Translations under genes and position numbers: made by a program
Shown: in pieces, positions 8,165-63,378 of the stretch
Layout of the letters: each line of letters begins with the position of its first letter
Position numbering within the stretch: position 1 is the first letter of the stretch
Notes under the pieces: generated by a model
Told to the model about the DNA's origin: nothing
The model's input: only the letters and a program-made list of their open reading frames with translations
The model's database searches: none
From: Fimbriosthenelais zetlandica
Taxonomy: Eukaryota
Length of the DNA: 64,000 bases
NCBI GenBank assembly: GCA_977030845.1
Contig: OZ365109.1
Span: forward strand, 6,696,001-6,760,000
Reading direction: 5' to 3'

Positions 8165-9564
8165 TTAGACTTCATAAACCACTGCGTAGGAGGAATGCTT
8201 GATGCAATACATATTGATGGAAGGTGGATGAGCGTGATTATTATTTACATAGAGGAAACCACCCAAATTGTCGGTTGTTGGCAGTGGTATCCAAACTGAG
8301 ATGTCTCTAATTGAGGTTGAACCACTGTCATCCCAGATTTTTTTCTGCTGAATACATCCTTCCACCAATGTCTTAAGCACGCACCTAAACTTTTCATCTA
8401 GGTCAGGTCCAGGTTTGTCCAACCTGTGATCAGGATAGAACACGTCACCAACGTACTGATAATCTGAAATAAAACAAATTATATAATTCTAATATATGCT
8501 AATATATATTATATGCTTACAATTATGCTTTGCTTGAGGCTTGTGACTATGTTTAGCCTACTCCAGGGGCCTGTTTCAGAACAACCATTAGCAATGGTAA
8601 GTCTATGGGGAATTTCTACGCTGAAACAGGCCCCAGGTCTTCGATTGAAGGCCCCAGTGAGGGTTTACTACATGTCTATACATCTACACGATATGTCTAA
8701 CCTTTTGGACAAATTGGCCTCCAGGCTGATCCGTCGTGAATATTTGTCCCAGCTGTGTCATCCCAGATAAATGTGAAGCCATCAGCTGGAGCAAGGGCAC
8801 CATTGCCAACAACTGATTCTTTGAAGGCCATAATTGGTTCGCTAAGTTCGTCATGGTTTGGCTGTCCCCGCTGACCCACTACCTTCCACTCCTTAGATGG
8901 AAGACTTGGCTCATAGCAGATGAAATCCTTGCTGATTGAGAAATGATATAAAATGTTTAATTGTTCATTCCGCCCTGGGCTGCATCAGGGGCCTGTTTCA
9001 AAACAACCAATAGCAATGGTAAGTCTGTAAAAGGGCGCGCATGTCCCCCCCCCCGTTTTCAGATTCCTGGGGGGGGGACATGAAATTGATACCGCAGCAT
9101 GAGAGTTCCTCCGAAATAGTGCCCTTAACATAATAAATGATCTTATAAAATAAATATTCCCGCGGATTCCCCCAGACTTGTGCACTTACCTTGCCGTTCC
9201 AAATCTGTCCGACCACACGCGATGACCCGTTCCTGCTTCGTTAGTATAGGCTTTCAACATAGTATCCTGTTTGTATACAACATAGAATACCAGTATGTGA
9301 TTTACATTGTAAAATAATAGCAACAAAATTAATCATAAATTAACATTGTCCACAAAGGTATTCTATACATTGAAGTTTCATACACTGATGATTTCGAAAA
9401 ATATGACCTACTCTATTAACTATTTGGCACATCTAATTTCCAGGTCCTAACCCAACAATGTAAGAAACTTTCACAATTATACGGTCAAAAGAAATATTAA
9501 ATATTATTACAGCGTAAGTGGATGCTGAAAGCATGCCGAAAATGAGGACGAAGGCTATCCACAT
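8165..9564 (-). CDS. Paralog A: secreted Vps62/DUF946 (beta-tripod-like) three-repeat protein, 219 aa; exons 9564-9511, 9266-9190, 8931-8702, 8463-8165
   Basis: Spliced: MWIAFVLIFGMLSASTYA|DTMLKAYTNEAGTGHRVWSDRFGTAS KDFICYEP...GFTFIWDDTAGTNIHDGSAWRPICPKDYQYVGDVFY...KIWDDSGSTSIRDISVW...GGFLY...YCIKHSSYAVVYEV*. GT-AG introns with phases 0,2,1. Hydrophobic 18-aa N-terminus ends in an STYA cleavage-like site. Confidence 0.85.
8567..8633. mobile_element. 67-bp PIF/Harbinger-like mini-MITE in paralog A intron 3, CAG target duplication
   Basis: cag|gggcctgtttcag...ctgaaacaggccc|cag; perfect 13-bp TIRs and 3-bp CAG duplication. Confidence 0.8.
8989..9026 (+). mobile_element. Solo left end of the gggcctgtttcag MITE family
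   Basis: cag|gggcctgtttcaaaacaaccaatagcaatggtaagtct; no matching right end nearby. Confidence 0.6.
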
Positions 9565-10055
9565 TGTGAATATTAAGAATGATGTGCAAAATCTAGCAGC
9601 GCTGACAGACGAATATTGAGCTGCTGCAAATATCGAGCTACATATGTATGTATTGTATACTAAATACGTAAATTATGTAGAGTGGATCATGAGTGATCCA
9701 ACTTGGAGGTGGGGGGGGGGTATATTTCCGATAATTAACCCGTCGAAGAGAAAGAAAAAATATTCATACACCAATTGTGAAATTGTCATACTGTTTGGAT
9801 TTGTGTTATCCGTTTTACAATAAATTTATGATTTAGGAACCCCATTTCCTAGCATCATTTCTGGGAGATGGATATCGATTTTAAGAGAAATGCCATTTAC
9901 ATACCCACCCACTTTAATTTTCCATTCAGGCTAGTTATTTGAGATAATTATGGTGAGAAAAATGAAGCATGTTAAGGATGGATATCATATCTTAGATGAC
10001 CCGGGACCATTCCCGACAGTGACAGGTGCCATTAATTCACTCTACGCATGCCTAT

Positions 10056-10308
10056 TGGCCCGTGTCCACGAGGCGACAAAATACACATTTTTTGTAGCTG
10101 AGCGCCAAAAATGCTGTCGCTGGCTTTTGTAGCTGTATGAAAAAGACACAAATTATTGATGAACAAAATGATTACCAATAGAAAGTCGCTACGTGAGCCT
10201 GATTTCTCAGCGAATTAGTGCTTAATTAGGTCGGCGCCAATGTTAGGGTCATCAAAAGTTAATTAGGTCATGTCGCTGACAATTTTGTCGCCTCGTGGAC
10301 AAGGTCCA
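10056..10308 (+). mobile_element. 253-bp PIF/Harbinger-like MITE, copy 1 (between paralogs A and B)
   Basis: TIR tggcccgtgtccacgaggcgacaaaa; near-identical to 10901-11153 and 15766-16018; flanks tat/taa; right TIR has 2 substitutions. Confidence 0.88.
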
Positions 10309-10594
10309 TAAACAATTAAAAAGATATATGAACGAGCCCATGGCAAGTTTTGAGCCATGTATCAATGACCCACATATTATATTTACATGTATACTATTAA
10401 GAAACCTACCCCTGAAAATGATACCAATACGGTTAAATATTGATAAGAAATGTTATAATGCAAAATCACAATGTTATCAAACAACGTAGGCCTACGTCGG
10501 GGAAAAGACCACCTGTCGGCCCCTCTCTATACATAACTCAGGGTCAGATTTCGACGCAGCAGGCCTTATATTCAGACTGAAACCGTGTTTCATA

Positions 10595-12851
10595 ATGGAA
10601 TGGTTTTGCATCTTGGTATTGACCCCGCTAATGGTAGGTATTTAGAAAAGTAATTCAAGCATTAATCCTTAAAGATTTATTTTCAAGCAAAATTAGTTAG
10701 TATGCATGAATATTATAATCAAACCGCATATAGCCGCATAGCCGCCATCTTAATTTCTCTATAAATTATGCTCATTTCTATGAAGAGTGGATGGCTGGGT
10801 GTGAAGGCAGAAGCTGAATTAGAAGCAAGAAGTACTGTCGGCGACAAAGCTGAATTTGTGTGGTGGGACAAGGGCGGATTGTCAGGGTAAGTCTGCATTA
10901 TGGCCCGTGTCCACGAGGCGACAAAATACACATTTTTTGTAGCTGAGCGCCAAAAATGCTGTCGCTGGCTTTTGTAGCTGTATGAAAAAGACACAAATTA
11001 TTGATGAACAAAATGATTACCAATAGAAAGTCGCTACGTGAGCCTGATTTCTCAGCGAATTAGTGCTTAATTAGGTCGGCGCCAATGTTAGGGTCATCAA
11101 AAGTTAATTAGGTCATGTCGCTGACTATTTTGTCGCCTCGTGGACACGGGCCATTAGGCTTTCCATATTAAATGTGTGTTTCTCATGACCAGCCCGTCGC
11201 TAAATTTAGCACCCGCCATATGAACCCCACTTCAATGCAACCGTTTATTACCCTGACCCTTGACCTACAAATTCAGGCACAGCTTTCTGGGTAGAAAAGA
11301 AATGTTTCTCTTTTTGGGGGAGAATGATGTTATAGGGTATATATGGTGGGAACATATTACAAATATACGTACGATTTCGTCGTCCTTAATACATGTGGAA
11401 AATATAGGCTACTTGATGCTCCGAATGGAAGGGGTGGGCGGTGTAGGGGGGGGCGGTGATCGGTGATGCAAATTATTAATAGGACCTACTTGGTGTTCAA
11501 TATACGATATCTCAATTTCAACAATCTTTTCACACCACTTTTCAATGTTGCAGCGAGGACTTTATATGCTATGAAGCTCGTCGTGAAACGCCTGAATGGT
11601 TTGTATTGGGCCATCGTGGCCAACAGAACCATGATCAACTCCAAGGTCCAATATTGGGATTCAGGGAAAAGGTAGAAAACACGGCGTTGATGATGCCCTT
11701 TGGCTTTCAATGGATATGGGATGATCGAAGGAGCATCATGGATGAGGATGGTAGCGTGTGGGGAGTCACTTGTGGCACAGGTGACATTCAATTAGGCCTA
11801 TCTGAAATTATATTGTTAACTTAAGTCTAATAATTATTTTTCTCCATCTGACGCTCGTTTCAGCGTAAAAAATTCCGATAGACTTAGCATCGCTAATGGT
11901 TGTTCTGAAACAGGCCCCAGATCGAATGTGTCTGTTTGGCGGGCCTGGGGGGGGGACTCTGAATTAAAGTGGGTACCTATGCTCGATCCCTACTTTCAAA
12001 ACCCGACCCTTTTCAAGGATTTTACCCTAAAAAGATACCCCTTTTCTTCAAAAACAAGGAGATTTTACCCGTCCAAAACCACCCCTCAAAGCAAATCAAG
12101 GAGAACATACCGTCGTCCGTGCCAACTATATGAAATATGTTATAACACAATGAAAAATATGCACTGTAAAATAAAAATGCATCATACAAGCCACAAGGAG
12201 CTATACCTATCAAACTTTTGAGAAATTTCCTGTTCTCTTTATTGGAATTTTTTCTTCAAGGAGGACAATCTGAAAAAGTACCCCTTTTTCTCGAATATCA
12301 AGGTCCTTGATATTAGCAGTAAAAGTACCCGCTTCTCCTGGAAAATGGGAACGAGCATAGGTATACAGCCTACCCACTTTAATTCCGAGTGCCCCCCCCC
12401 CCGGGTTGGCGGGTGGTTTGTCCCTTCACGACCCCATAGACCTAAATGGAAGAACAATGATAATGATAAACTTTCACTTGATGTTTTCTTAATGTGTTGT
12501 GGCTTACAAATGTCACATGCAGACAGTAAGATTGATCATTTCCCTCCAACAGGGTATGTTTCTCTCGGTGACTTGTTCTATGCGGCTAACAGAATCGATT
12601 ATCCAGGCGCCGATCTATACTACAAATCACGATGTGTGAGGGAGGATCTGACTGAGGTTTGTCAACTAGACAAAAGAATCTGGCATGATGGTGGCTCTTT
12701 TGCGAAGTATGATGTCTCAGTCTGGGAATCACTGGCATCTTCTAATGGGATTGGCGGATTTTTGTATGCCAATGCTATACATGCCAAACCGCCAGACGTG
12801 ACAGCTTATTGCCTCAAGAAATCATCTTATGACTTAATTGACGAGTTATAA
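10595..12851 (+). CDS. Paralog B: secreted Vps62/DUF946 (beta-tripod-like) three-repeat protein, ~221 aa; exons 10595-10633, 10786-10886, 11554-11780, 12553-12851
   Basis: Spliced: MEWFCILVLTPLM|SGWLGVKAEAELEARSTVGDKAEFVWWDKGGLSGEDFICYEA...FQWIWDDRRSIMDEDGSVWGVTCGTGYVSLGDLFY...RIWHDGGSFAKYDVSVW...GGFLY...YCLKKSSYDLIDEL*. Phases 0,2,1 as in A and C. Exon 1 (donor G|GTAGGT, AAG acceptor) is inferred by analogy; exons 2-4 are firm. Confidence 0.82.
10901..11153 (+). mobile_element. 253-bp PIF/Harbinger-like MITE, copy 2 (paralog B intron 2)
   Basis: 26-bp TIRs; TTA target duplication (10898-10900, 11154-11156); starts 14 bp after the splice donor. Confidence 0.92.
11879..11917 (+). mobile_element. 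Solo right end of the gggcctgtttcag MITE family
   Basis: acttagcatcgctaatggttgttctgaaacaggccc|cag. Confidence 0.6.
11944..12404. mobile_element. ~460-bp non-autonomous DNA element with CC(G)n-started TIRs (EnSpm/CACTA-like, uncertain) in paralog B intron 3
   Basis: Left cctgggggggggactctgaattaaagtgggtacctatgctcg vs right cgagcataggta...tacccactttaattccgagtgcccccccccccgg. An inverted, internally deleted fragment of the same family lies at 14411-14522. Confidence 0.65.
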
Positions 12852-13371
12852 ATGACGACCAGTAGCCTACTGTTAGATAGTGGTCAATAAAGTGTCTAAA
12901 ACTTCTATTACCTACGTAAGCCTATTCTTATTCCCATAATAAATTAAGCCTAAGCAATAAATGATTGAAAGAATCACAATAAATGTATAGGGCCTATCCT
13001 TAAACGAAAAGCCTTCCCAAGACTGACCTGGCGGCTCAATAGATAGCTTATTAATAGACAAACTTTATGTACTAGTCCCATCCCGATATTCGTCTCCATA
13101 TATGGAAGAAATGGCGCTCGGAAATTCATAGTGACCGGATAGTGACTGAATAATAATGTTTAGACCAGGCAGCTGCCATATTGCTTGTCAACGGTTCCCG
13201 CCATTTCCCCTTGGTGGCGCTGCAGTGAGTGCTTGGAAGTGCTTGGAAATCGCAAGCAAGATATCTCGTTAAAATCTCAAATTTTCAGCTGAGGGTTCTC
13301 CCGCTCACAGGGGCTTATTCCGTGCCCATTAAAGACCTTCCATGGGTTCCCTGTTACTGAGAGATCAGTGA

Positions 13372-13880
13372 AAGATCGGCGACATATATGCGACAGATCT
13401 GTGACAGGTCAGCAACACATCTTTCACAGATCAGCGACATGTCTATGACAGACCAGCGAGAGATCTGTGACATGTCAGCGACAGATCTATGACAGACCAG
13501 CGACAGATCTGTGACATATCAGCGATATATCTGTGACAGATCAGCGACACATCTGTGACAGACCGGCGACAGATCTGTGACAGATCAGCGACAGATCTGT
13601 GACAGACCAGCAATACATCTGTGACAGACCAGCAATACATCTGTGACAGACCAGAGACAGATCTGTGACAGACCAGCGACACATCTGTGACAGACCATCA
13701 ACAGATCTGGCGAGAGATCTGTGACATACCAGCGACAGATCTGGCGAGAGATCTGTGACATACCATCGACAGATCTGTGACATACCAGCGACAGACCTGT
13801 GACAGATCAGCGACAGATCTGTGACAGATCAGCGACATATAAGCAACAGTTCTATCAGCAAAACATCTGTGACAGATCTA
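13372..13880. repeat. Degenerate ~22-bp minisatellite (consensus gacagatctgtgacagaccagc)
   Basis: About 20 tandem imperfect units visible directly between paralogs B and C. Confidence 0.9.
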
Positions 13881-14373
13881 TCATGCCACTGTCGCCACAG
13901 TTGACAGATGGGTACTTGCGACCAAGTTTGCTGCGCTCCCCCCCCCCCCCCCCCCCCCGCCCACCTCTTAGAACACCTTGGACTCCAGTTTAAAATGGTC
14001 ACCCCAATCAAATCCTAGGATATGTACCTGAGATTGTCCTTAATTTCCTTTCTCTTTTATTTCATTTCTGTTCCGATGGGATAATATATCCAGGGAGGGG
14101 GGGGGGGGCTAGGTGGGGGGGGGGGGGGGGGGGGGGTTGAGCCCACTTCACGGAAACCCATTCCAGATTCCCCCCATGTTTGGGCAATACGCACCCCCCC
14201 CCCCCCCCCCCCCCATGAATAATCCTGGCTACGGGCCTGCATTGTACGCATTGTCCTTATTTCGAAATAAACCCTGGAACCGGAAAGACCTCTCGTAGCC
14301 TCTTCCTCTTTACTGGCCCCCTCGAGCTAAACCTATAGCTGTGCCAATGATACCCCGGTATCCTTCCAGCACA

Positions 14374-14409
14374 ACTTAGCATTGCTAATGCTTGTTCTGA
14401 AACAGGCCC
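14374..14409 (+). mobile_element. Solo right end of the gggcctgtttcag MITE family
   Basis: acttagcattgctaatgcttgttctgaaacaggccc|cag. Confidence 0.6.
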
Positions 14410-15036
14410 CAGGAAATGTCTCAGAAATATGATAGGTATAGCTCCTTGTAGCTTGTATGACGAATTTTTATGGGGGGAAAGGTACGGTACGGTACCAACT
14501 TTAATTCAGAGTGCCCCCGGGGCACATTGGTCCCTCAAAAGCGGTGATCTCCTATAGGGAAATAATGACCATTTTTCGCAGCAACGTCCAAAGGGGACTA
14601 AAGTAAAATTTCAACCGGCCTTATCATAGTGGGAAAATAAGCACCTGGCTCAATGAACAATCATTTGTTAGGAAATCAACATTTAAATTGTTTCGGTGCA
14701 CGTTGGATTGGAGAAGGACAAACGTCTCTCTTCTCCATCGTCTCCTTCGCCTTTTTACAGACAGATTTTTCCTCCGCCTCTTTACAAACAGACCGTAAGT
14801 AGTAGACATCACTCTGTCTTTAAATTTCATTGTTCAAATTAAAATGTATTTATTCAAATGTATGTCAATGCAAACATACATACAGAATTTGCTGGTAATT
14901 AAAGACACGTGTATAGGCATGTCTGGTATATTCCATGATTGTGGAAATAATTTAATCTTTGATTTTGTATCTTCTTATTCTATTTAAAACTAGGCCTACT
15001 TGTTAAATTTAAACCGGAGGACGAACCAAGGACGGC

Positions 15037-17045
15037 ATGGCACCCATGTCTCTGAAATTGATTGCCAGCATATGCATGCTTGTAAGTTATATACCGATAT
15101 ACAGTCATGTATACACTAGCGTTACTGTCATGTACTCAGACAAAGATACATGGAAAAAGTTAAGATTCTATAATTATAATTATTTTTGCCTAATCAAAAT
15201 ATTACCAGATTTTCCTTCATCTAGGCTGCATCTGTTTTGTGAAAAGTGCAATTTTAAAGGTCTTGGGTACATGACATTATGTATTACACTCCGACACGCT
15301 CATCTGTTGTGATATAAATATGGAATACAACTCGATATTGATCTGCTTGAGCATGGGTCGCACTCGGGGTGAAAACATGTAGATTATCTGCATGTTTTCA
15401 CCCCCTCTGCTCTCACAGATCAACGTATCGTTGTATGCCATATAAGTATTGATAATAACTTAATAATATAAATTAGTTCGGCTAATCAAGATGAAATATA
15501 TCAGGAAAAAATGGGCAATCCATATAATGGTGAATTTATTTTTCATCCTTGTCAAGTGCATATATGCAACACCGACCTCTGCTGCCGATACACCAGCGCT
15601 CGTGGCTCAAAAGTCAGATGCTACAAAAGCTGAGAGGGTGTGGTGGGATAAAGGAGGATTTTCCAGGTATACAATATGATAATAAATATTTTATTAAACA
15701 AGTCAATCTGTGAGACCTGAGCAAAACATGCTTTTAGGGTCTAAAGTGTGTGATCCACACTATAATGGCCCGTGTCCACGAGGCGACAAAATACACATTT
15801 TTTGTAGCTGAGCGCCAAAAATGCTGTCGCTGGCTTTTGTAGCTGTATGAAAAAGACACAAATTATTGATGAACAAAATGATTACCAATAGAAAGTCGCT
15901 ACGTGAGCCTGATTTCTCAGCGAATTAGTGCTTAATTAGGTCGGCGCCAATGTTAGGGTCATCACAAGTTAATTAGGTCATGTCGCTGACAATTTTGTCG
16001 CCTCGTGGACACGGGCCATAATGTAGTCTTTGTATGCGGACAGAGGGCAGCTAGGAGGGATCCCACCGTGACCCAGGGGCCTAGTGGTGATCATGATCAA
16101 CTATGATCATGAAGCTGATCCACTTTTCTAATCTGATTGGTACTTTGTCAATAGCTTTTAATAGTCTTATACTTTGGCAGCAGCATCGCGAAGGTCTTAT
16201 TGACAAAGTACCATACCCAGTTTTACTGTATTCTGATTTGTACTTTGTCAATAGAATTTAATATTAAGTACTTTGATAGCAGCGTCTGAAAACTCTTATT
16301 GTCAAAGTACCAATCAGAATCCTTGTTACAAAAAATTGGTCACCAATTTAGTCTATTCTGATTGGTTCTTTGGCTGTTAAACTGGCAAAGGCTATTGACA
16401 AAGTACTTTGGCACAAGCCATTGCCTTAAATTTAATATTTCGGGCTTTCTCTTCTTTCACACAGGCATGACTTCGTCTGTTATGCGCCTCATCGTGAGAG
16501 CACCGACTGGAATGTTCTTGGACACAGAGGTCAAGGAAATCATGATCCACTGGAGAATTTTATCTATTCATTCAAAGACAAAAATGGCTCAGCGTTTGCT
16601 ATGCCTCTTAGTTTTTCAATGATATGGGATGACCGTGGCAGCATTATGAATGAAGATGGAGGTGTATGGCGGGCCCATTGTCCTCAAGGTATTTGGGATT
16701 GATATGCCTATTTCGTTTTATTACCGCCTTGTGCTGATTGTTATGTTTTTAGTGCTGTCCCTCGTGGTGTCTGCCCGTCTGTCTGTCATACTTGATCTAT
16801 TTTAACCTTATCGTTTGACCTACTTTTAACATTGGGTTGACCTACTTTTCAAGTTGGTCAAACTATAAGTAGGCCAAGGTTATGTTTGACCTACTTTGTT
16901 CATACTTTTGATCCTGACGTCGTTTGACATACTTTTAACTGGCCTGACCTTGCTTGACCTACTATTCACAAATTACCTACCTACAAAGTAGGTCAGACAT
17001 GGTCAGTGGTCAAAAGTTCAGAGGTCACAATTGAGAGAGAGAGAA

Positions 17046-17117
<72 letters not shown>

Positions 17118-17587
17118 TGGCAGAGAGAGAAAGAATGAATTTAATGAACAAAAAAGCGGCCAAACACCAACAAAATACCAAACACATAAAAATCAATTTA
17201 GACCTATAGCCTAGTGCGATGAGAGGATCCTAACCTAACGTTAGCCTATTACATGTATTGACATTATATACATCAGTAAATTTTTCAGAATTTGTTGCTC
17301 TTGGAGACTTCTTCTATAAGGCTAATCGAATTGACAGACCAGGCAATGATCTCTTCAACAAAGTAAGGTGTGTGATGGACAAGTATGCGGAAGTATGCTC
17401 ATTTTGCGAAACTAAAATATGGGATGATTCAAGATCATTTGCCAATAATGATGTTTCTGTTTGGGCTTCATGTCCCTCTGAAAACGGAACATGTATTGGA
17501 GGTTTCTTATATGCTCATAAGGAACACGAGAGCCCTCCAGATATAAAGCCTTACTGTCTCAAAAAGGACGCTTTTGAAGAAAATTAA
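15037..17587 (+). CDS. Paralog C: secreted Vps62/DUF946 (beta-tripod-like) three-repeat protein, ~225 aa; exons 15037-15081, 15557-15666, 16465-16688, 17289-17587
   Basis: Spliced: MAPMSLKLIASICML|CIYATPTSAADTPALVAQKSDATKAERVWWDKGGFSRHDFVCYAP...FSMIWDDRGSIMNEDGGVWRAHCPQEFVALGDFFY...KIWDDSRSFANNDVSVW...GGFLY...YCLKKDAFEEN*. Phases 0,2,1; the last coding exon is 299 nt as in A and B. Confidence 0.85.
15766..16018 (+). mobile_element. 253-bp PIF/Harbinger-like MITE, copy 3 (paralog C intron 2)
   Basis: Same TIRs; TAA target duplication (15763-15765, 16019-16021). Confidence 0.92.
16718..17030. repeat. TGACC-rich interspersed element, possibly Helentron-associated (HINE/Pearl-like)
   Basis: Begins ttattaccgcc...gtctgtctgtc and contains many tgacctact motifs; family assignment rests on general resemblance only. 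Confidence 0.35.
17033..17113. repeat. (GA)n microsatellite
   Basis: ~80 bp of interrupted GA repeats in paralog C intron 3. Confidence 0.95.
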
Positions 17588-20865: not shown

Positions 20866-42196
<21,331 letters not shown>

Positions 42197-49889: not shown

Positions 49890-52800
49890 TCAACTCTTCC
49901 AGAGGGCCGAGTTTTGTGCAAGGCTGCGTGGGGGGATCATGTCCAGGAGGTATTGTCGCTGGAGCTCGGCCTTGGAGGACATGACTGTTTGGAAGGGGAA
50001 GGCGAGGCGAGGGTTAAACTGTAGTGACATGGGGTTGACACCACGTAGCTGGGCCTGGTGAGCTTGGATCAGGTTCTGATGTTGGCGGATCTGCTCCGTG
50101 GTCGGTTTAAGCGTCGTGGAGAGGTTCATAGGTGAGGCTGAATGAGCAGCAGCTATTTGAGCCAAATGGTGATGAGAACTGAGACCCCCACCATGGGACG
50201 AGGTATGGGCTGCCTGAACCGCCTGTGCTGCAGCCTGAGCCGCGGCAGCTGCCGCAGCTTTCTCTCGGTCTCGATCTCTCTCACGTTGTTGCTGCTCACG
50301 TTGTTGCTGCTGTTGTTGCTGCTGTTGCTGTTGCTGCATGCGTTGCTCAATCTCCTGCTCCTGCTGCAGGGCTTTGACAAAGGCTGATTTGAGGCGGTTG
50401 GTGTGCTCCTGCTTGAGCGCCTTCTTCTGGTTGGTTGTCACACAGGTCTCGCAGATGACATTCTTCGATCCAGGTTTGTCCCGTTTCCAAACGGGAGTGA
50501 AGTCGGTGCCACATTGTACACATACAAATGGATTGAACACATACTTAACATCAGGTTTGATGTCCCCTTTAGAGCGAGCGTCCGTCTCAGTGATATGCTT
50601 GACCACTTCTTCCAGTCCCACCAACAGGATGAACTCGTTACCCAGTAGACTAGGGATGAAGTTCATCTCTGGCGGGGGTGGTTTGGGTGGAGGGATTTGG
50701 AGCAGAGTTTTCTCAAGTTGTTTCCGCAGGGCAAGCTTGGCTGCTGCCTGTCGCTGAGCAGGCGTCTGCTCTGGCTGTGTTGGGGCGGTCTGCTGGTGAG
50801 AGTGGGACGAAGAATGGTGCGAAGAATGGGAAGAGTGAGATTGGATGGGTATGGACCCATGGAAGTTACTGGACGTAACCGAGCCACCTGAACTGTTGGA
50901 GCTGCTGCTTCGGATGTGATGAGAACCTACATGATTAGAGTTGCGATGGGCCATGATCAGAGGTGGTGGGCCTTGTCCGTGAGAGCTGGAGCCGGAATGG
51001 GACCGATGATGGGAACTGGTCTGTCCACGCATTAATTGCATCATCTGTGCTTGCTGCTTGCTGTGCATTGGGATCTGACTATTGTTACCGCCCCGCACTA
51101 ACGGAGGTGGACCATGCTGTCCACGTGGCAGCTGGTTCTTCACGGCTGTATTTGGTGGTTGTGTTGGTGGTGTCACGTGATTCTGTTCCTGTAGATGAAC
51201 CATCACTTGGCTCTGGCGGATCTTCTTCAGCAAGACTAACTTTGCCTCTTCGTTCCTCAGCTCTTCCTGTAAAGCACGGATGAGTTTCCGTCGCTCCTTG
51301 GTTTTATCAGAACTAGAAAGCTTGGTGGTTTTGCGCCCATTTTCATTCTCATCATCGGATAACATTATGACATCCCCAGTTGGGGAACCTGGCTTAGCTG
51401 ATAAGTCCATGGGTGCACTAAGGTCCATCGGACACTCTGTGTTTTCTTTATCACTATCTGAGCCCTTCTCACTGCCAGCATCACCGTTGGCATGGACTAT
51501 TTCAGGCTCTCCTGTCTTTTTCTCACTTTTTTTGTTATCTGTGGCCACATTGTCTTTAGCTACAGAACTCTTGTCTTTAGAGCGAGTCACACGTACATTA
51601 ATCTCTGGGGCAATGCTCTCATTACTTTCCTCAGAGACATCTTTGTCCTCCGTTTTATCTGATTTGTCCTCCGTTTTGTCGGATTTGTCCTCAGTTTTAT
51701 CTGATTTGTCCTCAGTTTTATCTGATTTGTCCTCAGTTTTATCTGATTTGACCTCAGTTTTATCTGATTTGACCTCAGTTTTATCTGATTTGTCTTCAGC
51801 CATATCTGATTTGTCCACAGTTTTATCTGATTTGTCCTCAGTTTTATCTGATTTGTCCTCAGTTTTATCTGATTTGTCCTCAGTATTATCTGATTTGTCC
51901 TCAGTTATATCTGATTTCTCCTCAGTTTTGTCTGATTTCTCATCAGTCTTGTCAGAGTCTTTCCCTGAAGTCAGATTATCATTATTGTCAGCTGATTCTA
52001 TGCCAGGCTCCTCGGGATCAGCTTCAGGGTCAGCCTTGGATTCCTCATTCTCCTCTGGCTTTTCTGAGAGAACAGGAGCCTCGGATTCCTCCTCCTCTGA
52101 TCCACTAGTGCCATTCTCAGCTGGTTTCTTGGCATTCACTTCATCAGGTTTATGATCATCTTCCTTCTGATCGCTACCCTCAGAGTCGGAGGCACGTAGT
52201 CTGTAAAGAGAATGGTAGATCTAGTGTCAAGAAAAGCATAGGCCTACATTATATAACTCCATCACAATTTTTCACTAAATGAGTCTAAAATCGCAAAAAT
52301 GTATTTTGAGTTAGTTGCAGATTCATATAGATCAGATCACGAGCGTTCCAATGTTGTATAGCACAATACGATGTGAAAAATATTTATATTTTTAATAAAA
52401 TAAAAGTAGTGGCAGCAGAAAACTAGAGAAATTTCAGACAATTTTCTGTCCAACTGGGAGAAATCTTGAACAAATCACGCTCAAGGGTGAACTCTTCTCA
52501 ATTTCACTCACAAAAAGAGTAAAAACTTTGTATCCTGGCTTTAATTGCGAAAATGCTAAGAGAAATAGGTGGTACAAGTACAACGCTGTCAGGCCTGTAG
52601 CTCCGAATCGCCCTGCGCGACTTTTGGCTTATTTAGTGAAAACACATCACAATTGTCATGTGTTTAAGACCTACAATATTTTACAGAAACCTGAATTAGT
52701 GCCGTTTACAGTTACTAAACATAGTCATTTTGTCCATGATTAATTAAATGTAGATAGTTCTGAACATTTCAGCCCAGATGACTCACCGTTTTTGTGAATT

Positions 52801-63214: not shown

Positions 63215-63378
63215 NNNNNNNNNNNNNNNNNNNNNNNNNNNNNNNNNNNNNNNNNNNNNNNNNNNNNNNNNNNNNNNNNNNNNNNNNNNNNNNNNNNNNN
63301 NNNNNNNNNNNNNNNNNNNNNNNNNNNNNNNNNNNNNNNNNNNNNNNNNNNNNNNNNNNNNNNNNNNNNNNNNNNNNN
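63215..63378. other. Assembly gap (164 N)
   Basis: Run of N. Confidence 1.

What the first reader, a model, noticed from the sequence alone, without database searches (positions are those of the whole stretch)
8165..17587. Cluster of three secreted, stand-alone Vps62/DUF946 (beta-tripod-like) proteins
Seen in sequence: three ~220-aa paralogs, fragmented in the ORF track by introns. Each has an N-terminal hydrophobic signal-like peptide followed only by three internal repeats of [VI]W-x-D-x-x-[GS]-x(3-4)-D-x-x-x-[WY]...[LV]G...C[VL]. In C these are VWWDKGGFSRHDFVCY / IWDDRGSIMNEDGGVW / IWDDSRSFANNDVSVW. Established (recalled, not searched): this repeat typifies Pfam Vps62/DUF946 and the three-fold beta-tripod domain of the MACPF insecticidal toxin GNIP1Aa, thought to be the targeting module. 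Inference: here the module is secreted on its own, with no pore-forming domain fused or encoded in the window. That points to an undescribed animal family of extracellular ligand-binding proteins (lectin-like immune recognition, mucus/shell-matrix component, or the binding subunit of a two-component toxin).
Basis: partly seen in the sequence, partly recalled or inferred. Interest (0 to 1): 0.82.

Follow-up and report, generated by a model that had tools for sequence, protein, structure and literature searches.

The report
Secreted beta-tripod protein gene cluster
Three neighbouring genes in an invertebrate (probably annelid worm) genome encode small, probably secreted proteins made only of the 'beta-tripod' binding module known from a bacterial insect-killing toxin; the family assignment is solid, but what they bind is untested.

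Summary
Window 8165-17587 carries three intact paralogous genes (A on the minus strand, B and C on the plus strand). Each has GT-AG introns and encodes a 219-232 aa protein with three ~64-residue repeats. Their exons match Pfam Vps62 (PF06101) collinearly. A profile built only from the window's last exons finds one solved structure, the C-terminal beta-tripod domain of the toxin GNIP1Aa (6FBM, E 3.9e-8). A full-length relative (34-37% identical) folds with pLDDT 93.8 and matches that domain at Z 23.4.

Only gene C has its signal peptide in the first coding exon. For A and B I predict separate mini-exons that encode it. A related species has the same head-to-head A/B pair with the same mini-exons. 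Non-synonymous differences are about 0.30 per site, while synonymous sites are saturated, so the genes are constrained. No pore-forming domain is fused or linked. No RNA data could be listed.

Best reading: a small lophotrochozoan subfamily of secreted, cysteine-bearing, single-domain beta-tripod proteins that act as extracellular target-binding modules. The ligand and role are unknown. This is a new member of a known domain family and of moderate interest. Stand-alone forms exist in bacteria, and a protein-atlas cluster pairs this domain with aerolysin-type domains, with chordates the commonest recorded phylum.

The parts
9511..9564 (-). Gene A, predicted mini-exon 1a. Encodes an 18-aa signal-like peptide (MWIAFVLIFGMLSASTYA) with a phase-0 donor GTAATA.
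   Evidence: Found by a scan for ATG + hydrophobic stretch + phase-0 GT; model built. The A-orthologue in L007 has an analogous mini-exon (MKFLLVILLLPVSAFA|GTGAGT). Prediction only; no RNA.
9190..9266 (-). Gene A, exon 1b. Holds the first half of repeat 1 (..VWSDRFGTA). Phase-0 acceptor, phase-2 donor AG|GTAAGT.
   Evidence: Read from the sequence. Same donor phase as B and C. Orthologous exon in L007 (..VWWDRFGTAA) seen.
8702..8931 (-). Gene A, exon 2. Second half of repeat 1 and first half of repeat 2.
   Evidence: PF06101 profile positions 56-131, 13.9 bits. 80.6 bits to family profile A3.
8165..8463 (-). Gene A, exon 3. End of repeat 2, all of repeat 3, and the stop codon.
   Evidence: 92.1 bits to family profile A3.
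10595..10633 (+). Gene B, predicted mini-exon 1a (MEWFCILVLTPLM, donor GTAGGT, phase 0).
   Evidence: The B-orthologue in L007 needs an upstream exon, because its exon 1b has no in-frame ATG and a stop lies just upstream. It has a matching candidate (MFRTPSLCLLLLLGGAL|GTGAGT). Prediction only.
10786..10886 (+). Gene B, exon 1b. First half of repeat 1 (..VWWDKGGLSG). An in-frame ATG at 10768 would give a version without a signal peptide.
11554..11780 (+). Gene B, exon 2.
   Evidence: PF06101 19.8 bits, profile positions 57-125.
12553..12851 (+). Gene B, exon 3 with stop codon.
   Evidence: PF06101 23.3 bits and 25.3 bits in the genome search, both above the 22.1-bit cut-off.
15491..15666 (+). 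Gene C, exon 1. Hydrophobic N-terminus (MKYIRKKWAIHIMVNLFFILVKCIYA..) plus the first half of repeat 1.
   Evidence: Kyte-Doolittle 9-residue maximum 2.78.
16465..16688 (+). Gene C, exon 2.
   Evidence: PF06101 20.8 bits, profile positions 56-131.
17289..17587 (+). Gene C, exon 3 with stop codon.
   Evidence: PF06101 18.8 bits, profile positions 148-224.

Best explanation
The cluster is three old tandem duplicates of one gene. A and B sit head to head, and C lies 2.6 kb downstream of B. Each encodes a small protein (about 200 residues once the N-terminal peptide is removed) consisting of a single beta-tripod domain. That domain is three pseudo-symmetric beta repeats, the same module that forms the C-terminal target-recognition domain of the MACPF toxin GNIP1Aa and that Pfam files under Vps62/DUF946.

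Shown here: the genes, their intactness and constraint, the family and fold assignment, and the absence of any fused or linked pore-forming domain.

Inferred: a cleavable signal peptide sends the proteins into the secretory pathway, and four subfamily-conserved cysteines form disulfides.

Further inferred, from what the domain is reported to do in toxins and in plant VPS13 proteins: outside the cell the protein docks onto a surface ligand (a membrane lipid, glycoconjugate or protein). It would then act as a soluble recognition or adaptor factor, most plausibly in defence or interactions with other organisms. The ligand and the physiological role are unknown.
For: Gene structure and constraint:
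- Canonical splice sites and open frames in all three genes.
- A related species' contig (L007) holds the orthologous head-to-head A/B pair with the same exon phases and mini signal-peptide exons.
- pN is 0.29-0.32, while pS is 0.77-0.92, which is saturated.
- In the tree, A and its orthologue pair at 99/98 support, and the cysteine-type subfamily forms one branch at 93/94.

Family and fold:
- Collinear PF06101 hits on the exons. Full-length relatives score 46-65 bits on profile positions 30-234.
- The window-only exon-3 profile hits 6fbm_A alone, E 3.9e-8. The family profile hits 6fbm residues 331-495, E 3.3e-41.
- AlphaFold model of relative P0006 has pLDDT 93.8. Foldseek to 6FBM gives E 2.9e-13. 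VIA-align gives Z 23.4, rmsd 2.9 A over 195 residues on 6FBM residues 313-516, and Z about 14 to the pleurotolysin B C-terminal domain.

Secretion:
- Hydrophobic N-termini in A, B, C and both orthologues, with no other hydrophobic segment.
- Relatives P0004, P0006 and P0020 start with typical signal peptides. P0006 and P0020 come from a metatranscriptome-labelled source.
- The N-terminal helix (residues 3-25) sits apart from the beta domain in the model.

Binding role:
- The beta-tripod is described as an additional target-recognition domain (PMC8624791), and as involved in surface-receptor recognition and protein or lipid interactions (PMC10683392).
- Relatives fuse it to MACPF, Toxin_10, aerolysin/ETX, ricin lectin or fascin domains.
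Against: - No RNA evidence: no sequencing run could be listed. Expression, the splice pattern and the two mini-exons are therefore predictions.
- No signal-peptide predictor was available.
- The fold was predicted for a 34-37% identical relative, not for the window proteins, because spliced sequences had no reference to submit.
- The canonical D-x-G-S/T-G-x3-D motif is degenerate in all nine repeats, so any binding chemistry that depends on it may differ.
- Nothing tested here addresses a ligand.
- The mature A and B proteins have five cysteines, an odd number that two internal disulfides do not explain.
Confidence: 0.6

Rival explanations
1. The proteins are the targeting subunits of a two-component pore-forming toxin or immune effector. 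A secreted beta-tripod would bind the target membrane and recruit a separately encoded pore former (MACPF or aerolysin/ETX-like), much as aegerolysin recruits pleurotolysin B.
For: - The same domain is the targeting part of GNIP1Aa.
- It resembles the PlyB C-terminal domain (Z about 14).
- Relatives fuse it to MACPF, Toxin_10 or aerolysin/ETX domains.
- The genome has one MACPF match and three ETX_MTX2-like ORFs.
Against: - No pore-forming gene lies in the window or near it. MACPF is 45 Mb away and the ETX_MTX2-like ORFs are on other contigs.
- No aegerolysin or Toxin_10 match was found, though those two searches rang in no control genome, so this is weak evidence.
- The three ETX_MTX2-like ORFs show no signal peptide, which fits poorly with a secreted partner.
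- No beta-tripod exon lies next to them.
Confidence: 0.12
2. The proteins are structural or adhesive components of an extracellular material such as mucus, tube, cuticle or egg coat, and not recognition factors.
For: - Small, secreted and cysteine-bearing.
- A modest multigene family (5-6 loci).
- The odd fifth cysteine could make intermolecular cross-links.
Against: - No low-complexity or repetitive matrix-type sequence.
- The domain's reported roles are recognition and binding.
- The gene copy number is small.
Confidence: 0.1
3. The proteins work inside the cell in vesicle or vacuole sorting, as the Pfam name Vps62 suggests.
For: The Pfam family is named after yeast Vps62.
Against: - Only profile positions about 30-234 of 541 are matched, and the proteins end there.
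- The link between the beta-tripod and Vps62 is described as a spurious alignment error (PMC7613979, citing Zaitseva 2019).
- The N-terminus looks like a signal peptide, and no membrane anchor is present.
Confidence: 0.05
4. The genes are not functional animal genes: they are decaying copies, or bacterial contamination of the assembly.
For: - The nearest multi-domain relatives come from environmental metagenomes. The named ones are bacterial: Neolewinella, Pseudomonas and Desulfococcaceae, and Riflebacteria.
- There is no RNA evidence.
Against: - Spliceosomal GT-AG introns in conserved phases.
- The genes are flanked by animal genes on a large contig; a p66/GATAD2 gene lies in the same window.
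- Orthologues sit in the same arrangement in a second species.
- All frames are open although synonymous sites are saturated.
Confidence: 0.03

Closest known systems
C-terminal beta-tripod domain of GNIP1Aa (Mpf3Aa1), Chromobacterium piscinae, PDB 6FBM
   Same: - Homologous by sequence: the window-only profile gives E 3.9e-8 and the family profile gives E 3.3e-41 on residues 331-495.
- Same fold in the model of a relative: Z 23.4, 195 residues, rmsd 2.9 A, chain residues 313-516.
- Three repeats with the W-x-D ... D ... W frame.
   Different: - GNIP1Aa carries an N-terminal MACPF pore-forming domain; the window proteins have none.
- The G-S/T-G part of the repeat motif is replaced in the window proteins.
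- They carry subfamily-specific cysteines and come from an animal gene with introns.
Bacterial and fungal single-domain 'Vps62-related' / DUF946 proteins (Pfam PF06101)
   Same: The architecture is the same: a signal peptide plus one beta-tripod of about 200 residues. Examples are a Riflebacteria protein of 228 aa and AlphaFold DB entries of 197-260 aa, one named 'Secreted protein'.
   Different: - About 25-34% identity.
- They keep the canonical G-S-G-A motif and lack the conserved cysteine set.
- The tree separates the cysteine-type (animal-type) group at 93/94 support.
- None of these has a tested function either.
Pleurotolysin B C-terminal domain (PDB 4OEJ, 4OV8, 9DO6)
   Same: A related three-lobed beta fold: Z about 14, about 155 residues aligned, chain residues 342-519.
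   Different: - Only 14-15% identity, and no sequence-level match.
- It is part of a MACPF protein.
- That it works together with the aegerolysin PlyA/OlyA is my recollection and the entry titles, not something tested here.
Beta-tripod domains of plant VPS13M1/M2 and plant DUF946 proteins
   Same: Same Pfam/InterPro family (IPR009291), with a proposed role in protein or lipid interaction and localisation (PMC10683392; PMC7613979).
   Different: These are intracellular domains inserted in giant lipid-transfer proteins, or in 500-600 aa plant proteins. They are not small secreted proteins.
ESM Atlas cluster with Vps62 plus Aerolysin/ETX_MTX2 domains (about 590 aa; commonest recorded phylum Chordata)
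   Same: It has a beta-tripod of the same shape (TM 0.78 over 190 residues), and most of its members with a recorded taxon are eukaryotes.
   Different: - There the domain is fused to a pore-forming module; here it stands alone.
- The taxon labels rest on few members, and I did not examine the sequences.

Membership tests
Beta-tripod / Pfam PF06101 (Vps62, DUF946) domain family | Significant match to the PF06101 profile | tested here: met
   B exon 3 alone scores 23.3 bits and 25.3 bits, above the 22.1-bit cut-off. The exon 2 and exon 3 pieces of all three genes hit collinear profile parts (about 56-131 and 147-224) at 11-21 bits each. The whole spliced proteins could not be submitted. Full-length relatives that align end to end score 46-65 bits.
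Beta-tripod / Pfam PF06101 (Vps62, DUF946) domain family | Three tandem repeats of about 60 residues | tested here: met
   Motif copies lie at 35/99/163 (A), 38/101/165 (B) and 50/112/177 (C). HMMER aligns the exon-3 profile to three successive parts of 6FBM.
Beta-tripod / Pfam PF06101 (Vps62, DUF946) domain family | Repeat consensus D-x-G-S/T-G-x3-D (as quoted in PMC8624791 from Zaitseva 2019) | tested here: inconclusive
   Read by eye from the models. All nine repeats keep the two aspartates at the right spacing. Position 3 is G in 5 of 9 repeats, position 4 is S/T in 5 of 9, and position 5 is never G (it is F, I, L or T). Relatives P0004 and P0006 depart from the consensus in a similar way. 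I read this as subfamily divergence of a consensus, not as exclusion, because the profile and fold evidence is strong.
Beta-tripod / Pfam PF06101 (Vps62, DUF946) domain family | Sequence homology to the structurally defined beta-tripod of GNIP1Aa | tested here: met
   6fbm_A is the only PDB hit of the window-only profile (E 3.9e-8). It is the top hit of the family profile (E 3.3e-41, residues 331-495).
Beta-tripod / Pfam PF06101 (Vps62, DUF946) domain family | Three-fold pseudo-symmetric beta fold | tested here: met
   Met for a proxy only. Relative P0006 is 34-37% identical to A, B and C over 189-194 residues. Its model has pLDDT 93.8 and matches 6FBM residues 313-516 at Z 23.4. The window proteins themselves were not folded.
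Yeast-type Vps62 (vacuolar sorting protein) | Match over the full-length Vps62 profile (541 positions) | tested here: not met
   Only profile positions about 30-234 are covered, and the proteins end there. Not filed as a Vps62 orthologue.
MACPF-beta-tripod toxins (GNIP1Aa type) or binary pore-forming toxins | A pore-forming domain fused to the beta-tripod or encoded next to it | tested here: not met
   No MACPF, aegerolysin, Toxin_10 or ETX_MTX2 match lies in the window. MACPF is at C1:51.7 Mb, and the ETX_MTX2 matches are on contigs C25, C27 and C37. The exon-by-exon search is insensitive, and two of these searches rang in no control genome.
Secreted proteins | Cleavable N-terminal signal peptide | tested here: inconclusive
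   Hydrophobic N-termini are present (Kyte-Doolittle 9-residue maxima 2.6-2.9), with small residues before the likely cleavage points. No signal-peptide predictor was available and there are no protein data. For A and B the peptide lies in predicted mini-exons.

The most novel reading that the evidence does not exclude
A and B have stayed head to head (start codons about 1 kb apart here, about 0.5 kb apart in the related species) although synonymous sites are saturated. Each mature protein has an unpaired fifth cysteine at the same position. They could therefore be co-expressed from a shared promoter region and form a disulfide-linked heterodimer. Such a dimer might act as a soluble pattern-recognition factor, or as the targeting half of a pore-forming system whose other half is encoded elsewhere. 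The subfamily's nearest named non-animal relatives are bacterial, so an old bacterial origin is also not excluded.
Probability: 0.12. Interest if true: 0.7.

Novelty: new member of a known kind. Interest (0 to 1): 0.4.

Why it matters
The beta-tripod is known as the aiming part of an insecticidal pore-former and as an accessory domain in plant, fungal and bacterial proteins. In none of these has its ligand been identified as far as the papers read here show. A small, soluble, naturally stand-alone animal version would be a convenient object for finding out what the module binds. It would also add a candidate recognition protein to the poorly known defence repertoire of annelid-like animals. 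On its own it is an annotation-level result: a known domain in an uncommon host and a simple architecture.

Tried and rejected
- RNA evidence: two searches for sequencing runs (gene C region, kind rna; A-B region, kind any) listed none. Read laying was therefore never used.
- Earlier scan notes: nothing near the window and nothing under the words tried.
- tblastn with the exon-1 peptides did not find A's first exon. It was found by reading the sequence.
- dN/dS could not be computed because synonymous sites are saturated. Only the pN versus pS contrast is reported.
- Aegerolysin and Toxin_10 genome searches found nothing, but they also rang in no control genome, so they are weak negatives.
- Cluster look-ups gave almost no organism names. 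AlphaFold DB rows came without organisms. The taxonomic range and a horizontal-transfer test therefore stay open.
- The paper defining the fold (PMC6386698) is not held. Its content is cited only through other papers.
- The spliced A, B and C proteins have no reference and were not typed in. Whole-protein Pfam scoring, structure prediction and complex prediction for the window proteins themselves were left out, and a relative served as proxy.
- Considered and rejected: a yeast Vps62 orthologue (only the first 40% of the profile matches), contamination, and pseudogenes (introns, synteny, open frames).

Full report
**What is there**

The window is eukaryotic DNA of 36-45% G+C and is part of a 447-Mb assembly. 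Between 8165 and 17587 lie three paralogous genes. Reading the frames and splice sites gave these models:

| Gene | Strand | Exons | Protein |
|---|---|---|---|
| C | + | 15491-15666, 16465-16688, 17289-17587 | 232 aa |
| B | + | (10595-10633), 10786-10886, 11554-11780, 12553-12851 | 221 aa |
| A | - | (9564-9511), 9266-9190, 8931-8702, 8463-8165 | 219 aa |

Exons in brackets are predicted mini-exons. All introns are GT-AG, and the intron phases are the same in the three genes: phase 2 inside repeat 1 and phase 1 inside repeat 2. Exons of different paralogues match at E 1e-15 to 1e-30. A regular expression for the repeat finds six hits in the six-frame translation of the 64-kb window, all in these genes. 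In the spliced proteins the motif occurs three times, about 64 residues apart.

**The N-termini**

Only C has a hydrophobic N-terminus in the same exon as repeat 1. The ATG-initiated frame of B's first-repeat exon is not hydrophobic. A's first-repeat exon was missed by tblastn and found by eye at 9266-9190 (..VWSDRFGTA, with a phase-2 donor AG|GTAAGT as in B and C).

For A, a short ORF 245 bp upstream encodes an 18-residue hydrophobic peptide ending in ..STYA. It is followed by a phase-0 GT that fits the phase-0 acceptor of exon 1b. B has a similar candidate at 10595-10633.

Independent support comes from contig L007, from another species. It carries the orthologous head-to-head pair. There the first-repeat exons have no usable in-frame ATG, so an upstream exon is required. 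Each is preceded by a short hydrophobic mini-exon, 16 or 17 residues long, with a GTGAGT donor in phase 0. These mini-exons remain predictions, because no sequencing run could be listed for this DNA.

**Are the genes alive?**

All frames are open. Between the window genes and their L007 counterparts, and between B and C, non-synonymous differences are 0.29-0.32 per site. Synonymous differences are 0.77-0.92, which is saturated. The copies are therefore old and under purifying selection.

A maximum-likelihood tree pairs A with its L007 orthologue (99/98 support). It groups the window's A, B and C, two further paralogues of this genome (C1:44.80 Mb and C10:30.13 Mb) and L007's B in one clade (99/98). 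A profile search of the genome finds one more exon-like piece on C11, so there are five or six loci in all.

**What family**

- Each exon 2 and exon 3 piece hits Pfam Vps62 (PF06101) on collinear parts of the profile. B's last exon alone passes the curated cut-off.
- A profile made only from the three last exons of the window finds exactly one solved structure, GNIP1Aa (6FBM), at E 3.9e-8. The alignment also shows the internal repeats.
- A search of 1.84 billion representative proteins with that profile gave only 281 hits at E <= 0.001.
- The best full-length hits are 200-250 aa proteins with signal peptides. Two come from a metatranscriptome-labelled source, two from run assemblies, and one is an 'unnamed protein product' of the annelid Owenia fusiformis. 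All carry PF06101.
- A family profile that includes the window exons hits 6FBM residues 331-495 at E 3.3e-41.
- Relative P0006 is 34-37% identical to A, B and C over the whole domain. It folds with pLDDT 93.8. The model matches the C-terminal domain of 6FBM (Foldseek E 2.9e-13; Z 23.4, 195 residues, rmsd 2.9 A, chain 313-516). The next best match is the C-terminal domain of pleurotolysin B at Z about 14.

The beta-tripod assignment is therefore well supported. The fold evidence is by proxy, since the spliced window proteins could not be submitted.

**What distinguishes this subfamily**

The alignment shows four cysteines shared by the window proteins and their closest relatives: in ..C-P.. of repeat 2, in R-C-V, eight or nine residues later, and in Y-C-L-K near the C-terminus. 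About 14 of the 169 hits scanned carry the cysteine pattern of the last repeat. The group forms one branch at 93/94 support against the other single-domain sequences sampled.

A, B and both L007 orthologues have a fifth cysteine in repeat 1. C has eight cysteines.

The published repeat consensus D-x-G-S/T-G-x3-D (PMC8624791) is only partly kept. The two aspartates are in place in all nine repeats, but the last glycine is always replaced.

**Host organism**

The neighbouring p66/GATAD2 gene (49890-52139, minus strand; P66_CC and GATA domains) is most similar, among named proteins, to that of the annelid Ridgeia piscesae (65% identity over 99% of the queried region). Nemertean, mollusc and brachiopod proteins follow. 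The window is therefore from a lophotrochozoan, probably an annelid.

**Context**

No MACPF, aegerolysin, Toxin_10 or ETX_MTX2 match lies in or near the window. The only MACPF match is 45 Mb away. Three ETX_MTX2-like intronless ORFs lie on other contigs and show no signal peptide. The exon-wise searches are insensitive, and two of them rang in no control genome, so this is a weak negative for the genome but a fair one for the window.

**How it probably works**

Papers describe the beta-tripod as an accessory target-recognition domain of GNIP1Aa (PMC8624791). They also describe it as a module for receptor recognition or protein and lipid interaction, and as widespread in plants and fungi (PMC10683392). 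PMC7613979 adds that the link to yeast Vps62 is a spurious alignment error.

Relatives found here attach the domain to MACPF, Toxin_10, aerolysin/ETX, ricin-lectin, fascin and other domains, or repeat it in tandem. This is the behaviour of a portable binding module.

My best reading is a secreted, disulfide-stabilised, single-domain binder of a surface ligand, probably used in defence or other interactions with foreign cells. The steps from 'beta-tripod' to 'secreted' to 'binds a surface ligand' are inference.

Rival readings, listed with their odds in the Rival explanations section:
- the binding half of a two-part pore former
- an extracellular matrix or mucus component
- an intracellular sorting role
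- dead or foreign DNA

**Novelty**

The domain family, its fold and its stand-alone secreted architecture are all known from bacteria and fungi. An atlas cluster also pairs Vps62 with aerolysin-type domains, with Chordata its commonest recorded phylum. I found no paper on the domain in animals in the held library, and animal members are essentially unannotated. I rate it a new member of a known kind, of moderate interest. The conserved head-to-head A/B pair and the odd cysteine are the only features that hint at something more.

Noticed in passing
window 10049-10309, 10894-11154, 15759-16019: Three copies of a 261-nt interspersed repeat, 97-98% identical and all in the same orientation. They lie in the A-B intergenic region, in the intron after B's first-repeat exon (exon 1b), and in C's intron 1. 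Probably a young SINE- or MITE-like element. It explains the recurring 'MSFSYSYKSQRQHFW..' ORFs in the ORF list.
   Followed up: partly
window 13314-13852: A minisatellite with an 11/22-nt period between genes B and C. It gives the 'CHRSVADLSQICR'-type pseudo-ORFs. Just downstream (about 13900-14250) lie proline/glycine-coding homopolymer-like runs.
   Followed up: no
window 17006-17196: A dinucleotide-type microsatellite inside intron 2 of gene C, seen as (SL)n and (ER)n pseudo-ORFs.
   Followed up: no
window 49890-52139 (-): A large single coding exon of a p66/GATAD2-type transcriptional repressor (P66_CC and GATA zinc-finger domains), with a long acidic 'DKSDKTE' repeat near its N-terminus. 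The best named match is the annelid Ridgeia piscesae.
   Followed up: partly
window 30001-32000: A 2-kb bin with unusually high G+C (0.565) and strong negative GC skew (-0.44) compared with its neighbours.
   Followed up: no
G000:C25:28748309-28748929, C27:20742878-20743429, C37:17624201-17624782 (loci L008-L010): Three intronless ORFs (197-293 aa) match the ETX_MTX2 (aerolysin-like) family above its cut-off. They have no extra domain and no obvious signal peptide.
   Followed up: partly
G000:C11:36434824-36435015 (+): A further beta-tripod exon-2-like piece (53 bits to the family profile) with an in-frame TGA. It may be a decayed copy.
   Followed up: no
protein P0026 (Owenia fusiformis, 186 aa): The only named animal homologue starts directly at repeat 1 without a signal peptide. 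If Owenia shares the mini-exon layout seen here, its gene model may lack the first exon.
   Followed up: no
window 63215-63378: A run of 164 N (assembly gap or masked stretch), left untouched.
   Followed up: no
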